A model generated the notes under the pieces. The model searched no databases and was not told the DNA's origin. It worked only from the letters and a program-made list of their open reading frames with translations. From IMG/VR virus record IMGVR_UViG_3300017987_000001, positions 143,858 to 207,857 of that record: 64,000 bases of DNA. One strand, 5' to 3'. Shown piece after piece: positions 51,545 to 63,927 of the stretch; position 1 is the first letter of the stretch; the number at the start of each line of letters is the position of its first letter. Both the position numbers and the translations under genes were made by a program.

Positions 51545-51545
51545 T

Positions 51546-51719: not shown

Positions 51720-51756
51720 GACTGACCGGTCACTCTTTGGGGGCAAAGGGGGATTC

Positions 51757-52110: not shown

Positions 52111-52113
52111 GGG

Positions 52114-52192: not shown

Positions 52193-52743
52193 TCCCTTGT
52201 CGACAACTCCAGCCAGCGCATCATCGGGATGCGCAGGCCGCTACCGTGCTCCGAAGTCCATTCGAGCGCACGCTCGTGGGTCATTCGCTCAAGCGCCCAC
52301 GCGAAGCTGGCGTGGAAGCGTCTATCTGCGATGAAGCCACAGTCAAGCTCAAGAAACCAGTTGAGCGAGCTTCCCGACACCGGATACGAAGGACTACCAC
52401 TCCGCAGGAAGTACCGCCATACCGCCTCACGTACTGCCTCATAGTCCGGCCGCTCGTACCAGCGCTTCCAACGCTGCTTTGCGTCTCCGTTCCGAGATGT
52501 GATATGGGCGTTGAGAAGCAACCCATCACGGTATGCGCGGGTGAGCACTCCTCCGAACTCCGTCCTCGACACGTAGTGATGGTACTGATCGTGCAGCGCA
52601 ACGAGCAGCGCTTCTGTGGAGTAGAGCTTCTTGGGATCCTCGTCGAGAATGCGGAGGATCAGATCCAGTGTGCGTCTTCGCTTCTTCGTGTTCGTCTTCT
52701 GCTTCGCTCCCGTCGAACGACGGCGCGGGGCAGTCGACCTCAT
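52183..52743 (-). CDS. hypothetical protein
   Basis: Stop codon is nt 8-10 of tRNA-Pro(CGG). Confidence 0.6.
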   Translation of the reverse strand: MRSTAPRRRSTGAKQKTNTKKRRRTLDLILRILDEDPKKLYSTEALLVALHDQYHHYVSRTEFGGVLTRAYRDGLLLNAHITSRNGDAKQRWKRWYERPDYEAVREAVWRYFLRSGSPSYPVSGSSLNWFLELDCGFIADRRFHASFAWALERMTHERALEWTSEHGSGLRIPMMRWLELSTRDGV

Positions 52744-52762
52744 AAGTTCCCTTTCATGAGAA

Positions 52763-52838
52763 TGGCGCACCCAGCAGGACTCGAACCTGCAAGCTCTTGG
52801 TCCGCAACCAAGTGTCCTATCCATTAGACGATGGGTGC
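52763..52838 (-). tRNA. tRNA-Arg(GCG)
   Basis: CTTGG-TTGCGGA-CCAAG; CCA. Confidence 0.9.
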
Positions 52839-52846
52839 GCCGACTC

Positions 52847-53362
52847 CTACGCCCGACCGAAGTACGGCGTCCAATCCGCGTAGCCAAGGCGTACGGCTCG
52901 CTCACGGATCAGTAGTGCGCGGGTTGGTACCCACGGCTCGCGAAGGAGCTTCATTCCAGCCTCCTTCGGCGTGCGGTCATCCTTGGTGTTGTTGCACGGC
53001 TTGCATGCAGCAACAACGTTCTTCCACGAATGCTTCCCGTCACGACAGAGCGGGAGGACGTGGTCGATGGTGGCCGAGTTGTCCGACAGGTGCCGCCCGC
53101 AGTACTGGCACGTGAATCCGTCACGGGCAAGAACGTTCTTCTTGTTCAGCCCAATGCGCCGACTGCCCGGGATCACCACGTACTTGACCAGCGCGATGAC
53201 GCTCGGCAGCGGGAAGCTCTGCGTCGCCGAATGCACCTCATCGCTCCAGTACTCGTACACATCAACCTTCTGCTTGAGCATCAGCCCAAGCGCCCGCGTC
53301 CAGTGAATCATAGATAACGGCTCACCGTTCGCGTTCAGAAGCAGCACCTTTCTCTGCTGCAT
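52847..53362 (-). CDS. HNH endonuclease (McrA-like)
   Basis: CQYCG, TIDHVLP, ACKPCNNTK. Confidence 0.92.
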   Translation of the reverse strand: MQQRKVLLLNANGEPLSMIHWTRALGLMLKQKVDVYEYWSDEVHSATQSFPLPSVIALVKYVVIPGSRRIGLNKKNVLARDGFTCQYCGRHLSDNSATIDHVLPLCRDGKHSWKNVVAACKPCNNTKDDRTPKEAGMKLLREPWVPTRALLIRERAVRLGYADWTPYFGRA

Positions 53363-53383
53363 GACGTCCTCCTTCCAAAGTAG

Positions 53384-53461
53384 TGGTCGGGACGAGAGGA
53401 TTCGAACCTCCGACCTCCTGCTCCCAAAGCAGGCGCTCTAGCCAAGCTGAGCTACGTCCCG
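53384..53461 (-). tRNA. tRNA-Pro(UGG)
   Basis: CCTGC-TTTGGGA-GCAGG; CCA. Confidence 0.93.
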
Positions 53462-53868
53462 TCCTTTCCATGTAGCCGACGCTCTCTCTTCCACACCGTG
53501 GTGAACGTACCATGGTACGGATCCAGCTCCTGCATGCACTTGTCGATGAATGGTTTAATCGTGTTCATCATCGGCTGTGCCTGAATCAGGTCCATGATGT
53601 CCGGGAACTTGCGTGCCCCTCCCTCAACGTGATCCATCTGCAGGCAGCGCTGGCACTGCTCGATGCGCACATCAGGCTCTTCTCCGGTCATGACCTTCCA
53701 TCGGTGTCCGAATACCAAGCATATGATCTTGTGAAGAAAGCGCCAGCGCGAACCCCAGTAGAGTCGCTCACGCGTGACTGGCTTGCCAATCGTTGGAAAG
53801 CAGAACTTCTCGAATGGGTTCACCGTTACTTTCGGCGTAGACTTGAATACCTCAAGTGGTGGACTCAT
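53452..53868 (-). CDS. hypothetical protein
   Basis: CLVFGHRW...CQRC; stop inside tRNA-Pro(UGG). Confidence 0.6.
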   Translation of the reverse strand: MSPPLEVFKSTPKVTVNPFEKFCFPTIGKPVTRERLYWGSRWRFLHKIICLVFGHRWKVMTGEEPDVRIEQCQRCLQMDHVEGGARKFPDIMDLIQAQPMMNTIKPFIDKCMQELDPYHGTFTTVWKRERRLHGKDGT

Positions 53869-53878
53869 GATACCTTTC

Positions 53879-53952
53879 TGGAGCCGAGAGCGGGAGTCGA
53901 ACCCGCATCTGCCGATTACGAATCGGCTGCTCTTCCGTTGAGCTACCCCGGC
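53879..53952 (-). tRNA. tRNA-Thr(CGU)
   Basis: GCCGA-TTCGTAA-TCGGC; CCA. Confidence 0.92.
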
Positions 53953-54311
53953 TCCCTCTTACCCATCTTGTGCGCACACATGTCGCAGTCTGGGTTATCG
54001 CAACCGCTGCAAGGCTCCGTATGGCTGCTGACGTATAGGTCGCAGAAGGTTTCTCTGTACAACCCATGCCGTGGGCAGTCAGTGTTATCGCAACTGACGC
54101 AGTTACGTACTGACGTCTGCGCCAGTAGCGCTTCGACCTCCTTGACACGCGACTCCGCTGCCTCAGCGCGTGCGACGGCCTTTAGCTCGGCGGCTCTTGC
54201 TTCGCGCATCGCCGTGATGCAGCGGGCTGTGGCTTCGTTCTCTGCGCGTCGCAGCCGCTCGCTTTCGGCGAGCTGCGCGCGGACCTCGTCGATAGAGTTC
54301 TGCTCGCTCAC
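53943..54311 (-). CDS. coiled-coil + Cys-rich hypothetical protein
   Basis: CVSCDNTDC, CSGCDNPDC; stop inside tRNA-Thr(CGU). Confidence 0.6.
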   Translation of the reverse strand: MSEQNSIDEVRAQLAESERLRRAENEATARCITAMREARAAELKAVARAEAAESRVKEVEALLAQTSVRNCVSCDNTDCPRHGLYRETFCDLYVSSHTEPCSGCDNPDCDMCAHKMGKREPG

Positions 54312-54507
54312 TTGCTGTCCTTATCGGGATCCCGTATCGCTTCGAGGCTCTCCATCCATGAATCGCACAGTAGAGCTTCGTCGGAAACGATCCGTTGTGC
54401 GAGTACGAGAACAGCACCTCTGCGATATTGTTACACAGATCACACCGACGTGTCGAGATGTCGAGCATCCATGTCAACTCGCGAACCTCACGAAATCTCA
54501 GGTTCAT
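54163..54507 (-). CDS. hypothetical protein (3' part overlaps the next gene)
   Basis: CDLC...YCAIH. Confidence 0.4.
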   Translation of the reverse strand: MNLRFREVRELTWMLDISTRRCDLCNNIAEVLFSYSHNGSFPTKLYCAIHGWRASKRYGIPIRTASERAELYRRGPRAARRKRAAATRRERSHSPLHHGDARSKSRRAKGRRTR

Positions 54508-55333
54508 CGGGGATCTTCATTCCCTTCTGCTTCATGTATCCGCGAATGATCTCGTACTCCGAGGAGAGTACGCCATTCACGAAGTAGTTCCAGCTGTTCG
54601 CAGTCGTCAGGATGGTGCGCCAGAGCGAAACACGCATCCCGTAGATCGAATAGATCGGTGCGGTTTCGTACTCGTCGAGCTTCGTGAAGCTCGCGTCGAT
54701 CTCCTTCGCCAGCTTCTCGAACTCGTCCTGTGCCGGCTTCCAGTCACGACGGCGTGTGATCGTGCTGACACGTCGAAGCTGTACGTACCGGACGTTCCTG
54801 AACTGGCTGATGTACTGGATCAGGTCCAGCACCTCGGGCGCGTTGTTCTGCGTCACAACGATAGCCATGCGCAGTGGCACGGTGATCTTCGGAATGAGCT
54901 TCTCCCATTCGGGCATGCTACGGCGGCCAGTAAGGAAGAAGAAGCGATCCGGGTCACGCGTAAGCATCGTCAGCCCGACCGCGTCCTCCGTGCACGTTGT
55001 ACACGCGTTGAAGAGGGCAAGATCGGGGATCATGCCATTGCTGCGCACGCCGACGTAGAAGCCCTGCTCTTTCAAGTAGTCCACGAGTTCGTGAATGTAC
55101 TTGTAGCAGGTCGGGTCGGTGTTCTGCCCCGTGATGTACAGCTGCTTCACGAGGCCGTTGCGGCACCACCCGAGGAATTCCTCGAATCGTGACCACGCAT
55201 CGAAGTGGACCTTGTTGAAATCGTACTTCGAGAACTCCTTCTCCAGATCCTTGCCCAAGCAGAAGTTGCAGTCGAGCGTGCACTTCCCGAGCAAGTTGAT
55301 ATTGGCGAATGTCGCAGCGCTCCTACGCTGCAT
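54488..55333 (-). CDS. radical SAM protein
   Basis: CTLDCNFC (CxxxCxxC), YITGQNTDP, VRSNG. Confidence 0.85.
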   Translation of the reverse strand: MQRRSAATFANINLLGKCTLDCNFCLGKDLEKEFSKYDFNKVHFDAWSRFEEFLGWCRNGLVKQLYITGQNTDPTCYKYIHELVDYLKEQGFYVGVRSNGMIPDLALFNACTTCTEDAVGLTMLTRDPDRFFFLTGRRSMPEWEKLIPKITVPLRMAIVVTQNNAPEVLDLIQYISQFRNVRYVQLRRVSTITRRRDWKPAQDEFEKLAKEIDASFTKLDEYETAPIYSIYGMRVSLWRTILTTANSWNYFVNGVLSSEYEIIRGYMKQKGMKIPDEPEIS

Positions 55334-55880
55334 CGTCGCCTTCCACTTCCGACATTCGGATCCTGCGCCCTATGCCGCCACGTCCGGGCTGAAAGCGTTC
55401 CGCCTTCGCGTTGAGCGTCAGCTCTACCTCATGCACGCCTGAGAATAGTTCGGTGATCAGCCGGGCCGCCAGCATAACGTCAGCGACCTCTTCCAGCATG
55501 CGCGCTCTGCCGATGCGCCCGCGCCGGTAGTGATTCATGGCCGTCAGCAGTTCGCCCATCTCTTCGGACGCGATATGGAACGCATGCTCCATGGCCTCTT
55601 CGCCATAGCCCTCTCGGTGGCGAACCAGTGCCTTGCGCACGTGCACGCTGTTCACGTCGAGGCGAGGCATGCAAAACTCGCGAGCGGTCTCACCCTCAGC
55701 CAGCTCGTACGTCAATGCGCCGCAATGCGGGCACTGACCTGACGGTACTACGCCGTTCGGCGTGAGCCGCTCCTGTATGTCGCTGATCATTTCGAGGCTG
55801 CCGCCCCAGATCAACTCGCCACAGTCATCGCACATGTGCTGTGCGTGAGAGTTGGCTTCCTGTATGTAGCACTCCGTCAT
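55323..55880 (-). CDS. Zn-ribbon + MazG-like NTP pyrophosphohydrolase
   Basis: CDDC/CPHC; SEEMGELL...EEVADV. Confidence 0.75.
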   Translation of the reverse strand: MTECYIQEANSHAQHMCDDCGELIWGGSLEMISDIQERLTPNGVVPSGQCPHCGALTYELAEGETAREFCMPRLDVNSVHVRKALVRHREGYGEEAMEHAFHIASEEMGELLTAMNHYRRGRIGRARMLEEVADVMLAARLITELFSGVHEVELTLNAKAERFQPGRGGIGRRIRMSEVEGDDAA

Positions 55881-55895
55881 GGAGTTCCTTTCGTG

Positions 55896-55969
55896 TGGAG
55901 CCGGGACCGAGAATCGAACTCGGGTGCCTACCTTACCAAGGTAGTGCTTTACCACTAAGCTATCCCAGC
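55896..55969 (-). tRNA. tRNA-Thr(GGU)
   Basis: CTACC-TTGGTAA-GGTAG; CCA. Confidence 0.92.
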
Positions 55970-55975
55970 TCCGTG

Positions 55976-56242
55976 TTACGGAACGACGGTGAACTCTTCC
56001 ATGTGATGCGTGTCACAGAACGCTTCAACGATCAGCAGCATGTCCGCTAGATCGAGGTTGCTGTCGTAGTAGAGTCCTTCGTCGGCTTCGTGCTGAAGCA
56101 TCTCCAGATCCACATGAATGCTGGAGACTTCGTATTCCGGACGGAAGCCTTCGAGAAGCGCGAAGGCGTCCGGCTCGGAAAACCCCAGTTCCTCAGCGAA
56201 CCGGATCAACTCATGAAACTCTACGGTAACGGTAGCCCGCAT
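55976..56242 (-). CDS. acidic hypothetical protein
   Basis: AGGAG RBS. Confidence 0.65.
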   Translation of the reverse strand: MRATVTVEFHELIRFAEELGFSEPDAFALLEGFRPEYEVSSIHVDLEMLQHEADEGLYYDSNLDLADMLLIVEAFCDTHHMEEFTVVP

Positions 56243-56258
56243 GCGGGTCTCCTGTGAT

Positions 56259-56336
56259 TGGCACCCCCGGTAGGACTCGAACCCACAGGTTGTCCGGATA
56301 GAAGCCGGATGCCTTATCCAGTTTGGCTACGGGGGC
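56259..56336 (-). tRNA. tRNA-Arg(UCU)
   Basis: TCCGG-CTTCTAT-CCGGA; CCA. Confidence 0.9.
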
Positions 56337-56800
56337 TAGAAGGTACGCTTGAACCACGTCGAGATCTTGTCGGCGGTGATGTGCAGCAGTGCACTCGCCT
56401 CAAGTCCGGCAAGCGCAGAAACGAGCGACCACTTGTGTGTGATCGCCCACTCCTGCAGCTCAGGTAGCGACGTCTTCTCCAGTAGAACGAACGGAGTGAG
56501 CACCAGCGCCACGAGGGGGCTGATGTAGATGAGCCGCGCCAGCGTGCCAATGATCGGCGTGTGGCTGAGCAAGCCGCGATGAGGCACGTACTTCTGGTAC
56601 AACCGCCAGTACCATGAAAGCCAGCCCCAGTGCTTGTATGGCTCCGATTCGAGATCGAGGTCAGGATTGAAAGCCAGAGCCGCGAACAGAAAAGCTGAAA
56701 TGCCGGGCAGTGCCAGCACGTCAAAGAAGTAGATCGCCACAGGTGCAGCGATAAGTACCATCATGACGTTCAGCTTGTTGTGTCCGCGATCATCTGGCAT
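56336..56800 (-). CDS. DUF2227-like metal-binding membrane protein
   Basis: NPDLD, PHRGLLSHTP, LHITAD. Confidence 0.75.
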   Translation of the reverse strand: MPDDRGHNKLNVMMVLIAAPVAIYFFDVLALPGISAFLFAALAFNPDLDLESEPYKHWGWLSWYWRLYQKYVPHRGLLSHTPIIGTLARLIYISPLVALVLTPFVLLEKTSLPELQEWAITHKWSLVSALAGLEASALLHITADKISTWFKRTF

Positions 56801-56802
56801 TG

Positions 56803-57261
56803 CTACTCCTCGAAACCGTCGACCAAATCGGACTCCTCATAGCCATCAAGGATGTCCGGTCGCGTCGGAACCTCGATGATGTTGTCGCTTGCTGCCAAGT
56901 GATGCGCAGCAGCCCAATCCTCAACCAGCTGTCGACGCTCCGGATCCCATTGTTTGATGATGTCAATTGGCACGTCGTAACTGACACACAACAGTAGATC
57001 GCGCAGCACCTCAAAAGAGTTGGCACCCTCGGAGGGATTTGAACCCCCAACCTCAGGTTCGAAGCCTGAGATGATATCCGTTTCACCACGAGGGTATCTC
57101 TTATCCAACTGCTCCAATAGAAGATCTTCCTCGACATAATACGGGTCGTATCCGCCGGGAAACGCATTGCCGAGAAGCTGCATGAGCCGCAGATCCGGAT
57201 TGTTCAGCCAGATCCTGCGAATCTTCGATAAGACCTTGTTGATTCTTCCAGCGGGTCTCAC
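56803..57261 (-). CDS. hypothetical ORF reading through tRNA-Arg(UCG); may be two genes
   Basis: RINKVL...IWLNNPDLRLMQLL...YYVEED; no stop before or within the tRNA. Confidence 0.5.
   Translation of the reverse strand: MRPAGRINKVLSKIRRIWLNNPDLRLMQLLGNAFPGGYDPYYVEEDLLLEQLDKRYPRGETDIISGFEPEVGGSNPSEGANSFEVLRDLLLCVSYDVPIDIIKQWDPERRQLVEDWAAAHHLAASDNIIEVPTRPDILDGYEESDLVDGFEE
57021..57095 (-). tRNA. tRNA-Arg(UCG)
   Basis: TCAGG-CTTCGAA-CCTGA; CCA. Confidence 0.88.
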
Positions 57262-57274
57262 GCTGTTCCTTTCA

Positions 57275-57352
57275 TGGTCGGGATGAGAGGATTTGAACCT
57301 CCGACCTCCTGACCCCCAGTCAGGCGCGCTAACCAAACTGCGCTACATCCCG
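57275..57352 (-). tRNA. tRNA-Pro(GGG)
   Basis: CCTGA-CTGGGGG-TCAGG; CCA. Confidence 0.93.
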
Positions 57353-57355
57353 AAG

Positions 57356-57429
57356 TGGTGTGGTAACGGAGAATCGAACTCCGGCCTCGACGTTGGCAAC
57401 GTCGTGTACTGCCACTATACGATTACCAC
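57356..57429 (-). tRNA. tRNA-Gly(GCC)
   Basis: CGACG-TTGCCAA-CGTCG; CCA. Confidence 0.88.
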
Positions 57430-57674
57430 TACCTTTGTTCAGCGCCGACGTGGTCTTCGTGCGGCGTGTCCACCCAGAAGACCTTCTCCATCGGTATCCG
57501 TCTGACGATCGGGCGTCCCCATTCATCCTTGTCGGGTAGCTCGATGCAGAAGCATCCTGCCTTCACGTAGAAGCGCCGCACGTCCGGGTACCGTTTCGGC
57601 GTACTCGCTGGGTCGAATACGAACTCCACCCAGTACGGCGCCTTCTTCTTCGCTTTCATATCCCAAACGTCCAT
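57429..57674 (-). CDS. hypothetical protein
   Basis: Last base of the TAG is G1 of tRNA-Gly. Confidence 0.55.
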   Translation of the reverse strand: MDVWDMKAKKKAPYWVEFVFDPASTPKRYPDVRRFYVKAGCFCIELPDKDEWGRPIVRRIPMEKVFWVDTPHEDHVGAEQR

Positions 57675-58798
57675 TTCGCCACGTCTATCGCCTTTGGATC
57701 ACCGATGGCCTTCTTCGGGTCGTCCGAAAGCTTGACCACCGGGACGTTGTCGATCTCGACCAGCTTGATGACGATGTTGGCTGATATGGTGCCGGGCACG
57801 TCGTTCGTCAGATTCGTACCGATCCCGAATGCGACCTTGGTCTGCTGAGCGAACTCGCGCTGAAGGCTGATGCACTTCGGCACGTCCAGCGAGTCGCTGA
57901 AGATGATGGTCTTCGACATCGGATCGACGCGTAGCCACTTGTAGTGATTGATCATCCGCCGCGCGAACTCCTTCGAGTTACCGGAATCCTGACGGACACC
58001 GTCGAACAGCCGAGCAAGCTTGCCGTCGAAGTCCTGCAGGAATGCGCTGGTGCCGAACGTGTCGGGGAGCGCGATGCCGAGATCGCCCTCATAGACGTCG
58101 TTCCATGCCTCCAATGCGAACTTGTTGGCGTGTCGCAAACCTACCAGCGCGGAAATCGCTTGGATCCACTCGTGCGCCATCGTACCGATGGGCTTGACCC
58201 CGTGCTTCATGGCGAAGTGTACGTTGCTCGTTCCGATGAAGTTCGGGAACTTCTTCAGCGCTCCTACGACCATGTCCTGCATGTGGTACGAGTAGCGCCG
58301 CCGCGTTCCGAACTCGGCGAACCGGCAGTCTTCGGCAAGCAGCATGCCCGCCTTCTTCAGCGCCTGCTCCTTCTGCTCGTCCCAGTTGGGGCGAGGCTGC
58401 TGCTGCGCCATGATTTGCTCGGTGACGATCGCGAGCAGTGGCACCTCCCAGTAGATAGTTTCGGCCCACAGGCCACTGATCTCGATCTCCGTACCAGCGT
58501 CGGTCGGGGTGATCTTCACGAGGTGCGGATTCGGCTGAAAGTGCTCCAGCCAGTCGATGTACCAGCCTTCCAAGAAGGGGCACTTCTCACGGAGGAACAG
58601 CGACTCCTTGTCGGTCAGCTTCGCGCGGCTGTAGCCCCACATGTGAGAGCTGACGTACTTCGCCATCACCTTCGTGACGGGCTGATGAGCATTTCGGTTG
58701 ACGAACCTGTACGTAGCCTGCGCCTTGGGGAACTTCTTGAGGACAGCTTGCCCCATCGTAAGCTTGTACAGGTCGGTATCAAGGATCGAAGGTTCCAC
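57656..58798 (-). CDS. pncB: nicotinate phosphoribosyltransferase
   Basis: LDTDLYKLTM, EFGTRRR, GTSN, GTMAHEW, VRQDSG, FSDSL, FGIGT, KLSD. Confidence 0.93.
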   Translation of the reverse strand: MEPSILDTDLYKLTMGQAVLKKFPKAQATYRFVNRNAHQPVTKVMAKYVSSHMWGYSRAKLTDKESLFLREKCPFLEGWYIDWLEHFQPNPHLVKITPTDAGTEIEISGLWAETIYWEVPLLAIVTEQIMAQQQPRPNWDEQKEQALKKAGMLLAEDCRFAEFGTRRRYSYHMQDMVVGALKKFPNFIGTSNVHFAMKHGVKPIGTMAHEWIQAISALVGLRHANKFALEAWNDVYEGDLGIALPDTFGTSAFLQDFDGKLARLFDGVRQDSGNSKEFARRMINHYKWLRVDPMSKTIIFSDSLDVPKCISLQREFAQQTKVAFGIGTNLTNDVPGTISANIVIKLVEIDNVPVVKLSDDPKKAIGDPKAIDVAKWTFGI

Positions 58799-59421
58799 TA
58801 CAGCTGCAGCCGTGCGGTGTGCTCGATGAGCACGCCCGCCTTGGCCATCTCCTCGATCGCTTCGACCGTCGTCTTCGGATCCACGCCCTTGCACGCGTCC
58901 AACAGGACGCTTGCGACGTAGCCCCTCTTGACGGCGTCGAGCGCGGTCGCCTTGACGCAGTAGTCCGTGGCAAGGCCGCAGATGATGAGGTTGTCATGCG
59001 GAGGCGTACCGGCGTGCGCCAACGTCTGCAGCATGGCCGTCGGATTCCTGCCCGCGTCCTCGAAGCCGGAATAGCTGTCGAACTGCGGGTTGGTACCCTT
59101 CTCGACGATGAGCTTGCCCTCAACGACCAGCAGCTGACTGTGCAGCTCGTTGCCGGGAGTCTCGACCACGCAGTGATCGGGCCAGAACATCTGTGGCTGC
59201 CCGTTCAGCACGCCCATCGTGAATGGCTCCGTGCCCTGCATCGACGCGAAGCTCTTGTGCATCGGCGGGTGCATGTCCTTCGTGTAGATGATGGGCAATC
59301 GCGAGAAGGCGAACTTGTTGATGACCCGATTGACGACCGGGAGTATGTGGACGGCATCCGGTACGGCAAGGCTGCCGCCGATGAAGTCGTTCTGCATGTC
59401 GACGACTATGAGCGTCGGCAT
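58798..59421 (-). CDS. pncA: nicotinamidase
   Basis: VDMQNDF..GSLAV, DMHP, WPDHCV, YSGF, GLATDYCV. Confidence 0.95.
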   Translation of the reverse strand: MPTLIVVDMQNDFIGGSLAVPDAVHILPVVNRVINKFAFSRLPIIYTKDMHPPMHKSFASMQGTEPFTMGVLNGQPQMFWPDHCVVETPGNELHSQLLVVEGKLIVEKGTNPQFDSYSGFEDAGRNPTAMLQTLAHAGTPPHDNLIICGLATDYCVKATALDAVKRGYVASVLLDACKGVDPKTTVEAIEEMAKAGVLIEHTARLQL

Positions 59422-60203
59422 TATGTTCCTCTCTGGAAGACGAGCAGACCCGCGCCCGACGGCGGGATCTCGCGCTTGTGCTGCGTGCGCTGATAAATGT
59501 CCAATACCTTCTTGTGGAGATCTTCGAGACCCTCGGGGATCGTGTCGCCCTCACTAATGGCGTACACGATCTTGTCGAGGTCGTCGTAGGACGCACCGAG
59601 TTCCTCTTCGTCCGTCTGGCCTTCCCACAGCCCCGCGCTCGGAGCCTTGGTGATGATTGCTTCGGGAACGCCCTTAACGCGCGCGAGCTGCCGCACTTCG
59701 CCCTTCAGCAGCCCCATGATCGGCTCGATGTCGATGCCGCCATCGCCGTACTTCGTGAAGTAGCCCAGCACGTCCTCGGTGAGGTTGGTCGTGCCGACGA
59801 CAAGCAGGTTGTGCGCGTTCGCCACGGCGTAGAGCGCCACCATACGAAGCCGCGACTTCGTGTTCGCGCGGGCCATCTTGCTGCTTCGCAAGTGCCCCGA
59901 AAGCGCACCCAGCTCCAGCGTCTTGAACGTCGGGAACAGGTCGATCTGCTCGGTCGCGATACCGAACGTCTTCGCGACCTCCCGCGCGTGCTCGGCGCCG
60001 ATCTTCGAGCTTTCACAGTCGAGGATCAGCCCGCGTACGCGATTCGCGCCGAGCGCGCCTACGCACAGCGCTGCGACGAGCGACGAGTCCACACCGCCGC
60101 TCAAGCCGACGACGACGCCGCTCGCGCCGACGCCCGCGATGTAGTTCCTGATCCAGTCCTGAATGGCCTCGATCGTCTTCTGTTCGTCGAGTCTCTCAAT
60201 CAC
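59421..60203 (-). CDS. nadE: NH3-dependent NAD+ synthetase
   Basis: GLSGGVDS, NTKSRLRM, GYFTKYGDGG, KAPSAGLWEGQTDE. Confidence 0.95.
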   Translation of the reverse strand: MIERLDEQKTIEAIQDWIRNYIAGVGASGVVVGLSGGVDSSLVAALCVGALGANRVRGLILDCESSKIGAEHAREVAKTFGIATEQIDLFPTFKTLELGALSGHLRSSKMARANTKSRLRMVALYAVANAHNLLVVGTTNLTEDVLGYFTKYGDGGIDIEPIMGLLKGEVRQLARVKGVPEAIITKAPSAGLWEGQTDEEELGASYDDLDKIVYAISEGDTIPEGLEDLHKKVLDIYQRTQHKREIPPSGAGLLVFQRGT

Positions 60204-60220
60204 AACTTCCCCTATCTTGT

Positions 60221-60295
60221 TGGAGCCAGCGAAGGGAATCGAACCCCCATTTTCGGATTACAAAACCGACGTAATGGCCGTTATACGACGCTGGC
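60221..60295 (-). tRNA. tRNA-Thr(UGU)
   Basis: TCGGT-TTTGTAA-TCCGA; CCA. Confidence 0.88.
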
Positions 60296-60300
60296 TCAGT

Positions 60301-60888
60301 CTACTCCAGTTCGTCTTCGCGGATGCCGCCGCTCGTCGGGACTTCCGCTGTACCCGAACGCCCGCCTATGTAGGCGCGGTTGGACATGGCCCACTCGTCC
60401 CGCCATCGCCACTTGCCGAGGACGAGCTGTGCGTAGTCGTCCTGATCGAGTTCGATCTTGTCGTCGACCGACATCTCCAGCATCTGAATCGCGACGGCGA
60501 AGTCTTCGTCGTGCGACTTCGGCACCTCGATGCTGTTGCGCAGCGCACGCGGGAACTTCGCGAGCTTCGGACCCTTGTCCATCAGTTCGCGGCCCAACGC
60601 CATCATGCGCGAGCGCCAGCCCTCCATCGCCGCCTTGTACTCCTCGGCGTGGACGGCGCGTTGCTTCTTCACGGCTTCGATGAGATCCGCCTTCATGACG
60701 GGGAACTTGATACTCAGCATTCGGTCTCCTGATTCGCGACGCAGCGCTCGCACGTTTGCGATCGCTACGCCGAGCTTCTCATAGCACTTGAACCGCAGCG
60801 GCTTGCCGCGAATGTAGCGCGGTACGCGGATGCTGCGGAACGGTACCGCCAGCTCAGGCGGTACCCGTATTCCGCCTTCGTCGGTCAT
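60301..60888 (-). CDS. hypothetical protein (start uncertain)
   Basis: Helical ORF between tRNAs. Confidence 0.6.
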   Translation of the reverse strand: MTDEGGIRVPPELAVPFRSIRVPRYIRGKPLRFKCYEKLGVAIANVRALRRESGDRMLSIKFPVMKADLIEAVKKQRAVHAEEYKAAMEGWRSRMMALGRELMDKGPKLAKFPRALRNSIEVPKSHDEDFAVAIQMLEMSVDDKIELDQDDYAQLVLGKWRWRDEWAMSNRAYIGGRSGTAEVPTSGGIREDELE

Positions 60889-60907
60889 TGAGTTGTCCTT
60901 GAAAGAG

Positions 60908-60984
60908 TGGAGCACGCAGCGGGATTCGAACCCGCACCTTGAGCTTGGAAGGCTCGTATGCTAGCCGTTAAACACCATGCGTGC
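60908..60984 (-). tRNA. tRNA-Gly(UCC)
   Basis: GAGC-CTTCCAA-GCTC; CCA. Confidence 0.9.
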
Positions 60985-60987
60985 GAT

Positions 60988-61118
60988 CCGGAGGTGCGTG
61001 CCGTGGGTTTTCGGGTTATCCCTTGGCATCCTTACGGTAACCGTGGCTTCCCATTGGTGGCCCGACTCGCGTGGCTTTCAGCCCCTCGGGCCAACAGGGC
61101 ATTGTGCCGATCCTCCGG
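60988..61118 (-). ncRNA. candidate multi-stem structured RNA
   Basis: Closing stem CCGGAGG/CCUCCGG, GGCCCGA/UCGGGCC, GAAA and GUAA tetraloops. Confidence 0.4.
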
Positions 61119-61126
61119 GATAAACG

Positions 61127-61202
61127 TGGTAGCGGGACCAGCGAGTCGAACGCTGATTGCCCTAGGTTATGAGCCTAAGTCCGATACCGACCGGCCTCCC
61201 GC
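61127..61202 (-). tRNA. tRNA with CAU anticodon (Met or Ile2), atypical D arm
   Basis: TTAGG-CTCATAA-CCTAG; T arm CAGCG/CGCTG; CCA. Confidence 0.75.
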
Positions 61203-61212
61203 ATCGTCTGTT

Positions 61213-61299
61213 TGGTGCTCAGGAGAGGATTTGAACCTCCACGTCCTTGCGGACACCAGCCCCTCAGACTGGCGCGTCTACCAGTTCCACCACCTGAGC
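61213..61299 (-). tRNA. tRNA-Leu(GAG), long variable arm
   Basis: CCAGT-CTGAGGG-GCTGG; CCA. Confidence 0.93.
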
Positions 61300-61449
61300 A
61301 TGTGGGAGGGCCGTGCGCGCGACCGGCCCTCCAACCATAGCAAGCCCCGGGTAGGGGCGTACAAAGACTGGCAGGTATACCACCCATCACCGGGTTGAGG
61401 TTTCCCTGCCAAAACCAGAAGAGGACGCAGCACCGTCCTCGCCGAACGC

Positions 61450-61536
61450 TGGTGCCGCCGAGAGGATTTGAACCTCCACGGGATTTCTCCCACTAGCTCC
61501 TGAAGCTAGCGCGTATGCCAGTTTCACCACGGCGGC
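61450..61536 (-). tRNA. tRNA-Leu(CAG), long variable arm
   Basis: CTAGC-TTCAGGA-GCTAG; CCA. Confidence 0.93.
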
Positions 61537-61548
61537 AGTAAATGTCAA

Positions 61549-61626
61549 TGGTACTGGGGACAGGATTCGAACCTGCAACATCCTGCTCCTAAGGCAGGCG
61601 CCTCTGCCAGATTGGGCTACCCCAGC
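61549..61626 (-). tRNA. tRNA-Leu(UAG), short variable loop
   Basis: CCTGC-CTTAGGA-GCAGG; CCA. Confidence 0.88.
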
Positions 61627-61628
61627 AC

Positions 61629-61704
61629 TGGGGCGAGCGGCGGGAATTGAACCCGCATCCCCACGGTCACAACGTGGTGTCTTTGCCACTGGACCACGCC
61701 CGCC
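61629..61704 (-). tRNA. tRNA-His(GUG)
   Basis: CCACG-TTGTGAC-CGTGG; G-1:C73; CCA. Confidence 0.92.
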
Positions 61705-61738
61705 ATCAGAAAGTTGAACGCGTGCAACAATGTGAGAA

Positions 61739-61817
61739 TGGCGCCCCCGACAGGATTCGAACCTGCGGCCCCCTGATCGACAATCAGGTGCTCTAAACCG
61801 GGCTGAGCTACGAGGGC
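61739..61817 (-). tRNA. tRNA-Asp(GUC)
   Basis: CCTGA-TTGTCGA-TCAGG; CCA. Confidence 0.9.
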
Positions 61818-61827
61818 GCGTATCTTG

Positions 61828-61904
61828 TGGTACCTCCGAGGGGACTCGAACCCCTACTCTCCACAGTGAGAGTGTGGTGACTTGGCCAGTTCGTCTACGG
61901 AGGC
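61828..61904 (-). tRNA. tRNA-Glu(CUC)
   Basis: CCACA-CTCTCAC-TGTGG; CCA. Confidence 0.9.
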
Positions 61905-61916
61905 TACTGGATGAAA

Positions 61917-61992
61917 TGGAACCCGCGACCGGATTCGAACCGGCACTCTCTAGGGTGAAAACCTAGTGACTTAACCATTCGTCTACGCGGGC
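61917..61992 (-). tRNA. tRNA-Glu(UUC)
   Basis: CTAGG-TTTTCAC-CCTAG; CCA. Confidence 0.9.
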
Positions 61993-62291
61993 TTCTCATC
62001 CGTGGCTTCGGCGAGCATCTGCAGGTACAGCTTCTTCCTGTCCTCGGAGGACAGCGGATGCTCGCCACGCATGCCGCACACCATCAGCTCGTTGAGCAGC
62101 GTCTTGGTGCCCATCGAACGGATGCGCAGCAGGCTGTTGGTTGCGGCACGAAGATGATTGATGTCGCCGGTTCGCAAGTAGCTGAGAAGCTGAAGGCTCA
62201 TATGCCCCGCCTCGTCCGCCGTCGCGAACACCGTATCGACCATCGTCTTCGGTACGTCAGGACTCGTCACGATCGTCACATCTTCAGACAT
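61983..62291 (-). CDS. hypothetical protein
   Basis: AAGGAG RBS; stop is nt 8-10 of tRNA-Glu(UUC). Confidence 0.65.
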   Translation of the reverse strand: MSEDVTIVTSPDVPKTMVDTVFATADEAGHMSLQLLSYLRTGDINHLRAATNSLLRIRSMGTKTLLNELMVCGMRGEHPLSSEDRKKLYLQMLAEATDEKPA

Positions 62292-62302
62292 GTCGCTCCT
62301 TC

Positions 62303-62376
62303 TGGATGCCCCACCGGGACTCGAACCCGGAACCCTCTGCTTCAAAGGCAGATGCTCTGCTTTGAGCTATGGGGCA
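62303..62376 (-). tRNA. tRNA-Gln(UUG)
   Basis: TCTGC-CTTTGAA-GCAGA; CCA. Confidence 0.88.
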
Positions 62377-62387
62377 CCCTTCGTTGG

Positions 62388-62462
62388 TGGCTCCACGGGG
62401 AGGACTTGAACCTCCAACCCTCCGGTTAACAGCCGGATGCACTACCGTTGTGCTACCGTGGA
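62388..62462 (-). tRNA. tRNA-Asn(GUU)
   Basis: TCCGG-CTGTTAA-CCGGA; CCA. Confidence 0.92.
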
Positions 62463-62464
62463 AA

Positions 62465-62538
62465 TGGTGGACCGACCGGGACTCGAACCCGGATCTCCTG
62501 CTTGCAAAACAGGGGTTCTCCCTTTGAACTATCAGCCC
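62465..62538 (-). tRNA. tRNA-Ala(UGC)
   Basis: CCTGT-TTTGCAA-GCAGG; CCA. Confidence 0.9.
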
Positions 62539-62541
62539 AGA

Positions 62542-62617
62542 TGGTTGCCCCGGGAGGACTTGAACCTCCAACTTCCTGATCCAGAATCAGGCGTTCTGCC
62601 AATTGAACTACGGGGCA
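62542..62617 (-). tRNA. tRNA-Gln(CUG)
   Basis: CCTGA-TTCTGGA-TCAGG; CCA. Confidence 0.92.
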
Positions 62618-62618
62618 A

Positions 62619-62695
62619 TGGTGGCCGCACTGGGAATCGAACCCAGAACCTCCCGATTAAGAGTCGGGGACTCTACGCAATTGAGTTACACGGCC
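62619..62695 (-). tRNA. tRNA-Lys(CUU)
   Basis: CCCGA-CTCTTAA-TCGGG; CCA. Confidence 0.92.
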
Positions 62696-62703
62696 GGTAT
62701 ATA

Positions 62704-62779
62704 GAGAAGGCGACGAAGAGGTGTAGAGATCCGTTTACATGGCAATTGTATGTAATCCCTACGGGCATTCGCCTTACTC
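62704..62779 (-). ncRNA. Y-RNA-like element 1 (short)
   Basis: AAGGCGA-AUG...GUAGGGAUU/GAUCUCUAC...UUCG-UCGCCUU. Confidence 0.65.
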
Positions 62780-62784
62780 ACAGA

Positions 62785-62862
62785 TGGTGGGAACGACCGG
62801 ATTTGAACCGGTAACACCGAGTGCTTCAAACTCGTGCTCTACCTGAGTTGAGCTACGTTCCC
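62785..62862 (-). tRNA. tRNA-Phe(GAA)
   Basis: CGAGT-TTGAAGC-ACTCG; CCA. Confidence 0.9.
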
Positions 62863-62889
62863 AAATTCGTTTTCCCGCTCCGCAAGAGA

Positions 62890-62965
62890 TGGTAGGCGCG
62901 GCAGGATTCGAACCTGCGATACCCAGTTTGTAAGACTGGTGTCTTAGCCGCTAGACTACGCGCCT
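62890..62965 (-). tRNA. tRNA-Val(UAC)
   Basis: CCAGT-CTTACAA-ACTGG; CCA. Confidence 0.92.
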
Positions 62966-62975
62966 GCCCAAGTAT

Positions 62976-63085
62976 GTGAACAGCGACAAGAAGTGGAGAG
63001 TGATAGCCTCCATAGGCTTCCCCCGGTAATCGGGGGATCAGGAATTGAACTTGATGTACACCCTACCGGGCATTCGCTGTATCAC
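62976..63085 (-). ncRNA. Y-RNA-like element 2
   Basis: ACAGCGA-AUG...GGGUGUACAU...CUUG-UCGCUGU. Confidence 0.65.
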
Positions 63086-63088
63086 GCG

Positions 63089-63176
63089 TGGTGGGGGCAG
63101 ACGGAGTCGAACCGCCAAAGCCTTTCGGCGGGAGATTTACAGTCTCTTGGGATCGCCACGTTCCCTGTGTACCCCC
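63089..63176 (-). tRNA. tRNA-Tyr(GUA), atypical acceptor/D-arm junction
   Basis: GAGA-CTGTAAA-TCTC; long variable arm; CCA. Confidence 0.82.
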
Positions 63177-63184
63177 AGTGAAGC

Positions 63185-63320
63185 TGCGTCGACTAGAAAT
63201 GGAAGAGTCGTTTTTGCGCTCTACCCACTGAGCTACCGCCGCATCAAGAGCGGCGGGCTGGACTCGAACCAGCGACCTCATCCTCCGTATGGATGTAGAC
63301 CCGTCCGGGCATTCGACGCA
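63185..63320 (-). ncRNA. Y-RNA-like element 3 with circularly permuted tRNA module (YrlA-like)
   Basis: UGCGUCGA-AUG...; T arm GCUGG-UUCGAGU-CCAGC; acceptor CCGCCGC/GCGGCGG closed by UCUUGAU; then D arm; ...CUAG-UCGACGCA. Confidence 0.75.
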
Positions 63321-63328
63321 ACATTTAT

Positions 63329-63397
63329 GTGAACGGACGACGAATAGGTAGGAGTCACCTTTATAATGTAGACCCCAAGGACATTCGTCCGTGTCAC
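63329..63397 (-). ncRNA. Y-RNA-like element 4 (short)
   Basis: ACGGACGA-AUG...GGGGUCUACAU...ACUCC...UUCG-UCGUCCGU. Confidence 0.65.
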
Positions 63398-63402
63398 GCT
63401 TG

Positions 63403-63482
63403 TGGTGGTGCGAGCTGGAGTCGAACCAGCGACCTCCTGTGTATCAGACAGGTGCTCTAACCAAGGGCTGAGCTACCGCACC
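63403..63482 (-). tRNA. tRNA-Ile(GAU)
   Basis: CCTGT-CTGATAC-ACAGG; CCA. Confidence 0.92.
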
Positions 63483-63524
63483 ACTTACGTTTGTGCATTC
63501 CGTATTCGATTTTCAAAGAGCAGC

Positions 63525-63596
63525 GTCGGCGACGAGTTGGGTTGTAGAGATCTGGTATGCTTAAATGGCATGTAATCCCTACGTTCATTCGCCGAC
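63525..63596 (-). ncRNA. Y-RNA-like element 5 (short)
   Basis: GUCGGCGA-AUG...GUAGGGAUU/GAUCUCUAC...CUCG-UCGCCGAC. Confidence 0.65.
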
Positions 63597-63607
63597 ACAC
63601 TTCTAGA

Positions 63608-63757
63608 GTGAAGCAGGCACGACAAGAATTGACGAGTCAACCCCGTCAGGGTCAGCTGCTCTGCCACTGAGCTATACGCCCATCAATGGGCGCAGAAGGA
63701 TTCGAACCCCCGACCCGCTGATTATGATGTAGACCCGATCAGCATTCGTACCTACAC
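63608..63757 (-). ncRNA. Y-RNA-like element 6 with circularly permuted tRNA module (YrlA-like)
   Basis: AGGUACGA-AUG...; UCAGC; T arm with UUCGAAU; acceptor UGCGCCC/GGGCGUA closed by AUUGAU; D arm; GCUGA; ...CUUG-UCGUGCCU. Confidence 0.75.
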
Positions 63758-63773
63758 TCGATTGTCAAAGAGC

Positions 63774-63850
63774 TGGTGGATCCGCTCGGACTCGAACCGA
63801 GGACCGTCCGCTTATGAGGCGGATGCTCTAACCGACTGAGCTACGGATCC
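63774..63850 (-). tRNA. tRNA with CAU anticodon (Ile2 or elongator Met)
   Basis: TCCGC-CTCATAA-GCGGA; CCA. Confidence 0.9.
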
Positions 63851-63852
63851 AC

Positions 63853-63927
63853 TGGAGGGCCGGACTGGATTCAAACGAGCATAAGCACGATCTGCAGTCG
63901 TGCGCCTAGTCGTTCGGCCACCGACCC
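63853..63927 (-). tRNA. tRNA-Cys(GCA), weak T stem
   Basis: CACGA-CTGCAGA-TCGTG; U73; T stem GCTCG/CCAGT mispaired; CCA. Confidence 0.72.

What the first reader, a model, noticed from the sequence alone, without database searches (positions are those of the whole stretch)
57656..60203. Phage pncA-pncB-nadE operon: a deamidating NAD+ rebuilding route
Seen: three stop/start-overlapping genes with intact catalytic motifs, inside the tRNA array. Known: they make up the Preiss-Handler salvage route (Nam to Na to NaMN, then NaAD to NAD), lacking only NadD/NadM here. NAD-depleting defences (Thoeris, DSR, SIR2-HerA) release nicotinamide, and the described phage NARP1 (Adps+Namat) and NARP2 (Nampt+Nmnat) pathways use other enzymes. 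Inference: a third, nicotinate-based NAD reconstitution pathway.
Basis: partly seen in the sequence, partly recalled or inferred. Interest (0 to 1): 0.75.

Follow-up and report, generated by a model that had tools for sequence, protein, structure and literature searches.

The report
Phage nicotinamide-to-NAD salvage operon
A 208-kb jumbo phage from marine and sediment metagenomes carries three tightly coupled genes (nadE, pncA, pncB) that, together with one host enzyme, should turn nicotinamide back into NAD+; the find is real, but this kind of gene set has already been noted in large phages and its role against NAD-depleting defences is untested.

Summary
Three minus-strand genes encode an ammonia-dependent NAD synthetase (nadE, 59421-60203), a nicotinamidase (pncA, 58798-59421) and a nicotinate phosphoribosyltransferase (pncB, 57656-58798). 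Their stop and start codons share one base (TAATG, TAGTG). They lie between tRNA-Thr(UGU) and tRNA-Gly(GCC), inside a 37-tRNA array.

The replicon is a complete 207.9-kb tailed phage. No NadD, NadM, NadR, Prs/Adps, Nampt, PnuC or Nudix gene was found in it, so the NaMN-to-NaAD step must come from the host.

Relatives show the module is old in this phage lineage. One keeps the same order and the same tRNA flanks. Two others carry a NadD-type gene between nadE and pncA.

- "NARP3" already names a PnuC-NadR pathway (2026).
- pncB-nadD-nadE clusters in jumbo phages were described computationally in 2024.
- No experiment links this route to defence escape.

Three results here appear to go beyond those reports:
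- nadE sits directly upstream of pncA in 23 of 92 viral loci but in 1 of 80 cellular loci.
- The set without NadD recurs in other complete phage genomes.
- None of 49 PncB-carrying viral records has a Nampt-type gene.

Verdict: a new variant of a known kind, of moderate interest.

The parts
59421..60203 (-). nadE: single-domain, ammonia-dependent NAD synthetase, 260 aa, GTG start
   Evidence: PF02540 E 1.8e-74 over profile positions 2-242 of 242; TIGR00552 259 bits. Best solved relative is 2e18 at 164 bits, and the SGGVDS loop is present. Matches phrog_11189 'NAD synthetase'. At 260 aa there is no room for a glutaminase domain.
58798..59421 (-). pncA: nicotinamidase, 207 aa; its ATG overlaps the nadE stop (TAATG)
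   Evidence: NF008623 at 194 bits, above the 174-bit cut-off. Aligns to nicotinamidases 2wt9 and 1im5 with the D-K-C triad and D/H/H metal site kept.
57656..58798 (-). pncB: nicotinate phosphoribosyltransferase, 380 aa; its GTG overlaps the pncA stop (TAGTG)
   Evidence: PF17767 plus PF04095; TIGR01514 401 bits; NF003704 454 bits. Best solved relative is 2im5, E 1e-79. All 55 columns conserved in cellular PncBs are kept. It is the only PF04095 gene in the genome.
60221..60295 (-). tRNA-Thr(UGU), 17 nt upstream of nadE; the same flank occurs in relative L016
   Evidence: ARAGORN. No terminator-like site lies between it and nadE.
57429..57674 (-). orf81: small ORF overlapping the pncB 3' end by 19 nt; function unknown, not found in relatives
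   Evidence: GC3 of 0.77. No Pfam or PHROG hit. No homologue in any fetched locus. Small beta-rich predicted fold with no nucleotidyltransferase lead.
57275..57429 (-). tRNA-Gly(GCC) and tRNA-Pro(GGG), the downstream flank; tRNA-Gly(GCC) also follows pncB in L016
   Evidence: ARAGORN.
60301..60720 (-). Conserved upstream neighbour of about 139 aa (listed as a 204-aa ORF up to 60915); viral family of unknown function
   Evidence: phrog_34511, E 5e-17. 43% identical to the ORF directly upstream of tRNA-Thr and nadE in L016. Atlas hits are viral hypotheticals only.
51468..63927 (-). tRNA array: 31 tRNAs in the window, continuing over the genome ends to 37 in all; interspersed with HNH, radical-SAM, MazG-like and DUF2227 genes

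Best explanation
The three genes form a translationally coupled phage operon, probably transcribed together with the tRNA array.

Proposed pathway:
1. PncA deamidates nicotinamide to nicotinate and ammonia.
2. PncB joins nicotinate to PRPP, with ATP-driven coupling, to give NaMN.
3. The host's own essential NadD adenylylates NaMN to NaAD. The phage has no enzyme for this step.
4. The phage NadE amidates NaAD with ammonia and ATP to give NAD+.

The net effect is that nicotinamide is pulled back into NAD+ during infection. Nicotinamide is the base released whenever NAD+ is cleaved. The most likely benefit is keeping the NAD+ pool up when host NADase defences, or infection itself, drain it. The route needs only nicotinamide, PRPP and ATP, and not intact ADP-ribose.

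Shown here: the enzyme families, intact catalytic residues, operon structure, phage origin, absence of NadD and conservation in relatives. Inferred: actual substrates, flux, dependence on host NadD, and any defence escape.
For: - Enzyme identity: equivalog-level HMM scores above curated cut-offs, and intact active sites.
- Coupling: one-base stop/start overlaps.
- Phage origin: single 207,857-bp record with 124-bp terminal repeats, rated 100% complete. It carries tail sheath, tail fibre, baseplate wedge, DNA polymerase, DnaB, UvsX and a phage RNA polymerase beta-like gene.
- Not a chimera: contigs from 4 runs in 3 studies span 57279-61900 with no mismatch and even depth.
- Missing partners: no NadD/NadM/NadR, Prs/Adps, Nudix, PnuC or second phosphoribosyltransferase.
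- Lineage conservation: relative L016 keeps nadE-pncA-pncB between the same two tRNAs. L015 and L018 have a NadD-type gene (TIGR00482) between nadE and pncA, which argues that NaAD is NadE's substrate in this lineage. The PncB sits in a viral-only clade of 6 sequences (SH-aLRT 98-99). The closest cellular PncB is 49% identical, against 65-72% for viral or metagenomic ones.
- Viral signature: nadE directly upstream of pncA in 23 of 92 viral loci against 1 of 80 cellular loci.
- Recurrence: the trio without any PF01467 gene recurs in complete terminal-repeat genomes of 341 and 405 kb.
- Alternative to Nampt: none of 49 PncB-carrying viral records has a NAMPT_N gene, whereas NadV is reported in about a third of jumbo phages (PMC9503650). 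This fits alternative solutions to one task.
- Precedent: NARP2, which also starts from nicotinamide and PRPP, abolishes Thoeris and DSR2 defence (10.1101/2024.02.11.579819).
Against: - No expression, enzymology or infection data exist. No RNA run was listed for the gene.
- The route costs three ATP-using steps plus PRPP, and depends on a host enzyme that could limit flux.
- Most bacteria already have NadE and many have PncA and PncB, so the gain over host enzymes is unproven.
- The phage encodes three NAD-dependent sugar-nucleotide enzymes. A plain cofactor-supply role would explain the operon as well.
- The host is unknown, so whether it carries NADase defences cannot be checked.
- The locus counts include related and duplicate contigs and are not independent samples.
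Confidence: 0.55

Rival explanations
1. General auxiliary metabolic module. The operon simply raises NAD+ supply for phage replication and for the phage's own NAD-dependent enzymes, for example in hosts or habitats poor in niacin salvage. It has no specific link to NADase defences.
For: The phage encodes two NAD-dependent epimerase/dehydratases and a UDP-glucose/GDP-mannose dehydrogenase. Li et al. 2024 interpret such clusters as NAD+ supply complementary to the host (PMC11662467). NARP2 raises NAD+ even without a defence system (10.1101/2024.02.11.579819). NadE alone is common in marine cyanophages and pelagiphages.
Against: Redox enzymes do not consume NAD+. No NAD-consuming gene was found: no NAD-dependent ligase, Sir2 or Macro domain. 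Starting the route at nicotinamide with PncA only pays if NAD+ is being cleaved. The absence of Nampt-type genes from PncB-carrying records suggests the same selective task as NARP2. The two readings are not mutually exclusive.
Confidence: 0.3
2. The NadE homologue is an NMN synthetase, as in Francisella. NaMN is amidated to NMN, and a host NMN adenylyltransferase (NadR, NadM or a promiscuous NadD) finishes NAD+.
For: NadE is of the short form. Its second-best solved relative is the Francisella enzyme 3fiu at 134 bits, and that organism's NadE homologue works as an NMN synthetase (PMC3376133). The phage lacks NadD.
Against: The best solved relative is the short archaeal-type enzyme 2e18 at 164 bits. 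A characterised archaeal single-domain NadE has NAD synthetase activity and no NMN synthetase activity (PMC3376133). In Francisella the switch goes with replacement of NadD by NadM, whereas this phage's relatives pair nadE with a NadD-type gene (TIGR00482). This route would still need a host adenylyltransferase, so it does not explain the missing gene.
Confidence: 0.07
3. Shifted specificity makes the trio self-sufficient. For example, the PncB-like enzyme would put nicotinate onto an ADP-ribosyl donor to give NaAD directly, by analogy with Namat in NARP1, so that NadD is not needed.
For: In NARP1, genes annotated as Prs and Nampt turned out to use ADP-ribose-derived substrates (10.1101/2024.02.11.579819). 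The trio without NadD recurs in complete phage genomes.
Against: No Prs/Adps-like gene is present to make the activated donor. PncB keeps every one of 55 columns conserved in cellular PncBs and nests among them. Relatives do carry NadD.
Confidence: 0.03
4. The genes are cellular: host contamination, a provirus flank or a chimeric assembly.
For: The enzymes are typical bacterial housekeeping families. IMG/VR holds some proviruses with host flanks (searches list several).
Against: The record has terminal repeats and is rated 100% complete. Phage structural and replication genes are present. Independent contigs of up to 72 kb in three studies carry the operon with the tRNA array at even depth. 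A collinear relative exists. The nearest cellular PncB is only 49% identical.
Confidence: 0.01

Closest known systems
Bacterial Preiss-Handler / pyridine nucleotide cycle (PncA, PncB, NadD, NadE)
   Same: The same enzyme families and the same chemistry. All catalytic residues are kept.
   Different: It is encoded by a phage. The NadD step is missing. nadE and pncA are fused into a translationally coupled pair, an order rare in cellular loci (1 of 80 against 23 of 92 viral).
'NAD-jumbo phage' Preiss-Handler clusters (pncB-nadD-nadE, e.g. Kuafu_71; Li et al. 2024, PMC11662467)
   Same: Large phages carrying nicotinate-branch NAD+ genes in a cluster. The evidence there is computational only.
   Different: Here pncA is part of the operon, so the entry substrate is nicotinamide, and nadD is absent. 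That paper defined its phages by complete pathways and framed them as NAD+ supply, not as reconstitution from NADase products.
NARP2 (Nampt + Nmnat, Vibrio phage KVP40; Osterman et al.)
   Same: Rebuilds NAD+ from nicotinamide, PRPP and ATP by classical salvage chemistry. It is independent of ADP-ribose.
   Different: NARP2 uses the amidated branch (NMN), two enzymes, and its own adenylyltransferase. Here the route is the deamidated branch with three phage enzymes plus host NadD. No Nampt-type gene occurs in any of 49 PncB-carrying viral records.
NARP1 (Adps + Namat) and its phosphatase extension against aRES
   Same: A phage operon aimed at the NAD+ pool.
   Different: NARP1 needs ADP-ribose and uses previously undescribed reactions. 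Neither a Prs-like nor a Namat-like gene is present here. A nicotinamide-only route would not be blocked by ADPR-1''-phosphate formation, the property of aRES reported in 10.64898/2026.01.28.702374; this last point is my inference.
NARP3 (PnuC-like transporter + NadR-like enzyme; PMC13464706)
   Same: A phage-encoded NAD+ restoring pathway, and already the 'third' one named.
   Different: NARP3 imports nicotinamide riboside. Neither PnuC nor a NadR/HIGH nucleotidyltransferase is present here.
Sinorhizobium phage Phosso (PV764938) and the 735-kb metagenomic phage LR756501
   Same: Deposited phage genomes that hold PncA-like, PncB and NadE genes within a few kb of each other.
   Different: Phosso adds its own NadM-like adenylyltransferase and a MutT/Nudix gene. 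Its PncB is only 33% identical, and its PncA-like gene is only weakly similar (26%).

Membership tests
Nicotinamidase (PncA, isochorismatase-like hydrolases) | Score above the curated equivalog cut-off for nicotinamidase/pyrazinamidase | tested here: met
   NF008623 at 194.1 bits against a cut-off of 174.
Nicotinamidase (PncA, isochorismatase-like hydrolases) | Asp-Lys-Cys catalytic triad and Asp/His/His metal site | tested here: met
   D8, K108 and C155 plus D49, H51 and H83 align to 1im5 and 2wt9 and to 69 homologues.
Nicotinamidase (PncA, isochorismatase-like hydrolases) | Hydrolysis of nicotinamide to nicotinate | not testable with these tools
   Needs an enzyme assay.
Nicotinate phosphoribosyltransferase (PncB, type II PRTase) | N-terminal NAPRTase_N domain plus catalytic barrel, with scores above equivalog cut-offs | tested here: met
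   PF17767 plus PF04095; TIGR01514 401.5 against 269.55; NF003704 454.2 against 379.
Nicotinate phosphoribosyltransferase (PncB, type II PRTase) | Conserved histidine of the GT(M/Q)AHEW motif (the site of ATP-coupled phosphorylation, from my own knowledge of PncB) and the other conserved active-site columns | tested here: met
   GTMAHEW is present. No deviation in any of the 55 columns that are at least 95% conserved in 80 cellular PncBs.
NH3-dependent NAD synthetase (NadE, single-domain) | Full-length NAD_synthase domain with the SGGxDS ATP pyrophosphatase loop and no glutaminase domain | tested here: met
   PF02540 positions 2-242 of 242; TIGR00552 259 bits; SGGVDS present; 260 aa in total.
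NH3-dependent NAD synthetase (NadE, single-domain) | Substrate is NaAD rather than NaMN | tested here: inconclusive
   Sequence is closer to 2e18 than to the Francisella enzyme 3fiu, and relatives pair it with a NadD-type gene. No specificity signature could be checked, because the key paper is not held.
Complete Preiss-Handler pathway / 'NAD-jumbo phage' as defined by Li et al. 2024 | All steps encoded by the phage, including NaMN adenylyltransferase (NadD/NadM) | tested here: not met
   No PF01467 match at E up to 1, no tblastn hit to three phage adenylyltransferases, and no HxGH/ISSTxxR motif in any six-frame ORF.
Phage NAD+ reconstitution pathways (NARP class) | Encoded by a phage | tested here: met
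Phage NAD+ reconstitution pathways (NARP class) | Restores NAD+ and overcomes NAD-depleting defence | not testable with these tools
   Needs infection assays and NAD+ measurement.
NARP1 | Adps (Prs-like) plus Namat (Nampt-like) | tested here: not met
   No PF13793 or PF14572 match. The only PF04095 gene is PncB, which has a NAPRTase_N domain.
NARP2 | Nampt plus Nmnat | tested here: not met
   NAMPT_N is absent from all 49 related records as well.
NARP3 | PnuC-like transporter plus NadR-like enzyme | tested here: not met
   No PF04973 match and no PF01467 match.

The most novel reading that the evidence does not exclude
The NadD-less trio is a self-contained reconstitution device rather than three-quarters of a textbook pathway. 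One enzyme would have an unannotated activity that removes the need for NadD, as happened with 'Prs' and 'Nampt' in NARP1. Alternatively, PncA and NadE would work as a coupled pair in which the amide nitrogen freed from nicotinamide is handed to the ammonia-dependent NadE. The second idea would explain why nadE-pncA adjacency is typical of viruses.
Probability: 0.06. Interest if true: 0.8.

Novelty: new variant of a known kind. Interest (0 to 1): 0.45.

Why it matters
NAD+ depletion is a common endpoint of bacterial immunity (Thoeris, DSR, SIR2-HerA, aRES). Three phage pathways that rebuild NAD+ have been demonstrated.

A deamidating route starting from nicotinamide would be a fourth chemical solution. 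It needs no intact ADP-ribose, so defences that spoil ADP-ribose should not block it. It would also show phages borrowing one essential host enzyme (NadD) instead of carrying it.

The viral nadE-pncA module and its apparent exclusivity with Nampt-type genes give a simple marker for surveying such phages. Isolated phages with related gene sets, such as Phosso, make the idea directly testable.

If the operon only boosts cofactor supply, it is an ordinary auxiliary metabolic module.

Tried and rejected
- DNA similarity of the operon to 50,697 GenBank phage records: no match.
- DNA polymerase search: no isolated relative, at most 26% identity, so no host could be assigned.
- Cellular PncB relatives are at most 49% identical and taxonomically scattered, from Bacteriovoracaceae to Methanosarcina and Obscuribacter.
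- Promoter and terminator scan of 56-61.5 kb: nothing above shuffled expectation.
- RNA runs: none was listed, so there is no expression evidence.
- Hidden adenylyltransferase: the two unknown neighbours (orf81 and the 139-aa upstream ORF) gave only viral or hypothetical leads, and the motif scan was empty.
- NadE-PncA complex prediction: score 0.00. The tool's verdict was 'no answer', and the controls were not run, so this is neither support nor evidence against.
- The Francisella NMN synthetase paper could not be read, so no residue-level specificity test was possible.
- TAG recoding was considered, because pncA ends in TAG and the phage has a tRNA with a CUA anticodon. It was rejected because TAG is the commonest stop (92 of 237).
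- A search for 'NARP4' found no phage pathway under that name.
Full report
WHAT IS THERE. On the minus strand of the window lie three genes in the order nadE (59421-60203, 260 aa), pncA (58798-59421, 207 aa) and pncB (57656-58798, 380 aa). Their profile matches are strong:
- NadE covers the whole NAD_synthase profile (PF02540, E 1.8e-74) and scores 259 bits on TIGR00552.
- PncA passes the curated equivalog cut-off for nicotinamidase (NF008623, 194 against 174 bits).
- PncB has both NAPRTase domains and passes TIGR01514 (401 against 270 bits) and NF003704 (454 against 379 bits).

Alignments to solved structures show intact active sites:
- PncA keeps the Asp-Lys-Cys triad and the Asp/His/His metal site. 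Comparison with 69 homologues confirms this.
- PncB keeps the histidine of GTMAHEW and every one of the 55 columns that are at least 95% conserved in 80 cellular PncBs.
- NadE keeps the SGGVDS loop. At 260 aa it has no glutaminase domain, so it is the ammonia-dependent form.

OPERON ANATOMY. I read the junctions directly.
- The nadE stop and pncA start form TAATG, preceded by AGAGGA.
- The pncA stop and pncB start form TAGTG.
- This places the pncB start at the GTG at 58798. That start keeps the N-terminal SILDTDLYKL motif present in all close homologues. The longer 412-aa ORF would overlap pncA by 97 nt, and the database start drops conserved residues.
- nadE begins 17 nt after tRNA-Thr(UGU), behind a GGGGAAG site.
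- A small unknown ORF (orf81) overlaps the pncB end and is followed by tRNA-Gly(GCC) and tRNA-Pro(GGG).
- No promoter-like or terminator-like signal exceeds chance in 56-61.5 kb. Co-transcription with the tRNA array is therefore the simplest reading, but it is an inference.

IS IT A PHAGE? Yes.
- The window is the last 64 kb of a single 207,857-bp record with 59.7% G+C. Its first 124 bases recur at the end. IMG/VR classes it as having direct terminal repeats, and CheckV rates it 100% complete.
- It encodes tail sheath, tail fibre, baseplate wedge, a family A DNA polymerase, DnaB-like helicase, a UvsX-like recombinase, an SbcC-like protein and a phage multisubunit RNA polymerase beta-like protein.
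- It has 38 tRNAs. Of these, 37 form one array that runs across the genome ends.
- Contigs from four public runs in three studies (sediment and seawater metagenomes) hold the operon. Pieces of 6-72 kb cover 57279-61900 without a mismatch, at an even depth of 11-14. They break only at tRNA-Pro, where other organisms' tRNAs cross-map. The operon is therefore not an assembly chimera.
- No isolated phage is close; the DNA polymerase is at most 26% identical to any. The host is unknown.

WHAT IS MISSING. The phage has no NaMN or NMN adenylyltransferase:
- no PF01467 match even at E = 1;
- no tblastn hit to three phage adenylyltransferases;
- no HxGH/ISSTxxR motif in any open frame.

It also lacks Prs/Adps, Nudix, PnuC and any second phosphoribosyltransferase. 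The pathway needs one host enzyme, most plausibly NadD. From general knowledge, NadD is near-universal and essential in bacteria. The two unknown neighbouring ORFs give no hint of a nucleotidyltransferase.

RELATIVES.
- The nearest PncB homologues (57-72% identity) are metagenomic.
- Their contigs are phage-like. L016/L020 (65%) has nadE-pncA-pncB in the same order, between the same tRNA-Thr(UGU) and tRNA-Gly(GCC). It also has homologues of the upstream ORF, DUF2227 and the MazG-like gene in the same order.
- L015 (59%) and L018 (57%) have nadE, then a NadD-type gene (TIGR00482), then pncA, with pncB 2-6 kb downstream.
- In a tree of 159 PncBs, the window groups with these and L025 in a viral-only clade of six (SH-aLRT 98-99), nested among mixed viral and cellular sequences. 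The best cellular match is 49% identical, and the matches are taxonomically scattered.
- Three of the six carry a NadD-type gene (L015 and L018 by family match; L025 by a 31% tblastn match). The complete window genome does not. Loss of nadD in the window's branch is the most economical history, but this is an inference: the L019 and L020 contigs are short fragments.

HOW COMMON IS THE SET?
- In GenBank phages it is rare. PncB and PncA each hit 13 of 50,697 records, and NadE hits 53.
- All three occur together in Sinorhizobium phage Phosso (which has its own NadM-like gene and a MutT gene; its PncA-like gene is only weakly similar, 26%), in the 735-kb metagenomic phage LR756501, and in a few gut contigs of uncertain purity.
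- In IMG/VR, 473 stretches encode a PncB relative.
- Within 6 kb of PncB, 27 of 92 retrieved viral loci have both PncA and NadE. In 23 of these, nadE lies directly upstream of pncA on the same strand. Among the 80 best cellular loci the figures are 11 and 1.
- Among 12 PncB-carrying viral records rated at least 90% complete, 9 have NadE, 5 have PncA (4 of them strongly) and 9 have some PF01467 gene. Two complete terminal-repeat genomes (341 kb and 405 kb) have the trio without PF01467, like the window.
- None of 49 PncB-carrying records has a NAMPT_N gene, although NadV is reported in about a third of jumbo phages (PMC9503650).
- These counts include related contigs and are not independent samples. 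PF01467 also matches other cytidylyltransferases.

WHAT IT MOST LIKELY DOES. The chemistry follows from the families:
1. Nicotinamide is deamidated to nicotinate (PncA).
2. Nicotinate is converted to NaMN (PncB, using PRPP and ATP).
3. NaMN is adenylylated to NaAD (host NadD).
4. NaAD is amidated to NAD+ (NadE, using ammonia and ATP).

Starting at nicotinamide makes sense mainly when NAD+ is being cleaved. NARP2, which also starts from nicotinamide and PRPP, abolishes Thoeris and DSR2 defence (10.1101/2024.02.11.579819). A nicotinamide-only route should also be indifferent to what a defence does to the ADP-ribose half, which is the weakness of NARP1 exploited by aRES (10.64898/2026.01.28.702374). 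The second point is my inference.

I therefore favour NAD+ pool maintenance with defence escape as the main benefit, at about 0.55. The main rival, at about 0.3, is plain cofactor supply. The phage has two NAD-dependent epimerase/dehydratases and a UDP-glucose/GDP-mannose dehydrogenase. Li et al. read similar clusters as supply complementary to the host (PMC11662467). No NAD-consuming gene was found: no NAD-dependent ligase, Sir2 or Macro domain.

A Francisella-like NMN synthetase role for NadE is possible but less likely. The best solved relative is a short archaeal-type enzyme. A characterised archaeal NadE has no NMN synthetase activity (PMC3376133). Relatives pair nadE with a NadD-type gene, not a NadM-type one. 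A NadD bypass through altered PncB specificity has no support.

COMPARISON WITH WHAT IS KNOWN.
- The enzymes are ordinary members of their families.
- As a phage system it is not NARP1, NARP2 or NARP3, because each of their defining genes was searched for and not found.
- It is also not a 'complete' Preiss-Handler phage in the sense of Li et al. 2024, because nadD is missing.
- Two earlier surveys of phage NAD+ systems that I searched describe only NadV, NadM and NadR as phage NAD+ synthesis enzymes (PMC7824862, PMC9503650).
- In the papers I searched, I found no experiment on a PncA-PncB-NadE route in phages.
- What appears new here is the inclusion of pncA as the entry step, the virus-typical nadE-pncA pairing, the recurrent NadD-less form, and the lack of overlap with Nampt-type systems.

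VERDICT. This is a new variant of a known kind, of moderate interest (0.45), and directly testable with standard phage-defence assays.

Noticed in passing
window 29279-29353 (-): A tRNA with a CUA anticodon (called tRNA-Pyl by ARAGORN), i.e. a potential amber suppressor, lying far from the main array. TAG is nevertheless the commonest stop in my gene set (92 of 237), so genome-wide recoding is unlikely and its role is unexplained.
   Followed up: partly
window 2557-12539 (-): Sugar-nucleotide modification cluster: two NAD-dependent epimerase/dehydratases, a UDP-glucose/GDP-mannose dehydrogenase, two FkbM-type methyltransferases, a SAM methyltransferase and a sulfotransferase-like gene. These might serve DNA or surface glycan modification (my speculation), and they are the phage's own NAD-using enzymes.
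   Followed up: partly
window 14046-16820 (-): A 924-aa ORF with no PHROG hit and a weak intein-splicing-domain match (23 bits, below the cut-off).
   Followed up: no
window 52847-56800 (-): Other genes scattered through the tRNA array: an HNH endonuclease, a radical-SAM protein, a zinc-ribbon plus MazG-like pyrophosphohydrolase, and a DUF2227 membrane metal-binding protein. DUF2227 is 66% identical in relative L016, more than any of the NAD genes.
   Followed up: partly
L015:2284-4354 and L018:5997-8029: Related phage contigs carry nadE, a NadD-type gene and pncA back to back. A full four-gene nicotinamide-to-NAD set therefore exists in the same viral clade, with pncB 2-6 kb downstream.
   Followed up: yes
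viral records G010, G011, G025, G028 (behind loci L022, L023, L045, L053): In-frame TAG or TGA codons lie inside otherwise good NadD or PncA matches. This suggests stop-codon recoding or broken genes in those phages.
   Followed up: no
genome G000:C1:127628-129490 (outside the window): A phage multisubunit RNA polymerase beta-like gene (phrog_3015 and phrog_25354), as in phiKZ-like jumbo phages. Whether this phage also has a nucleus shell protein was not checked.
   Followed up: no
window 57182-57378 and 60925-61121: Contig depth spikes 5- to 80-fold over tRNA-Pro(GGG) and tRNA-Gly(UCC) in all four runs, and contigs break there. This is cross-mapping of other organisms' tRNA genes, not a copy-number change.
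   Followed up: yes
genome ends, G000:C1:1-124 and 207734-207857: A 124-bp terminal direct repeat. The tRNA array continues across it, with six more tRNAs at genome 327-2155.
   Followed up: yes
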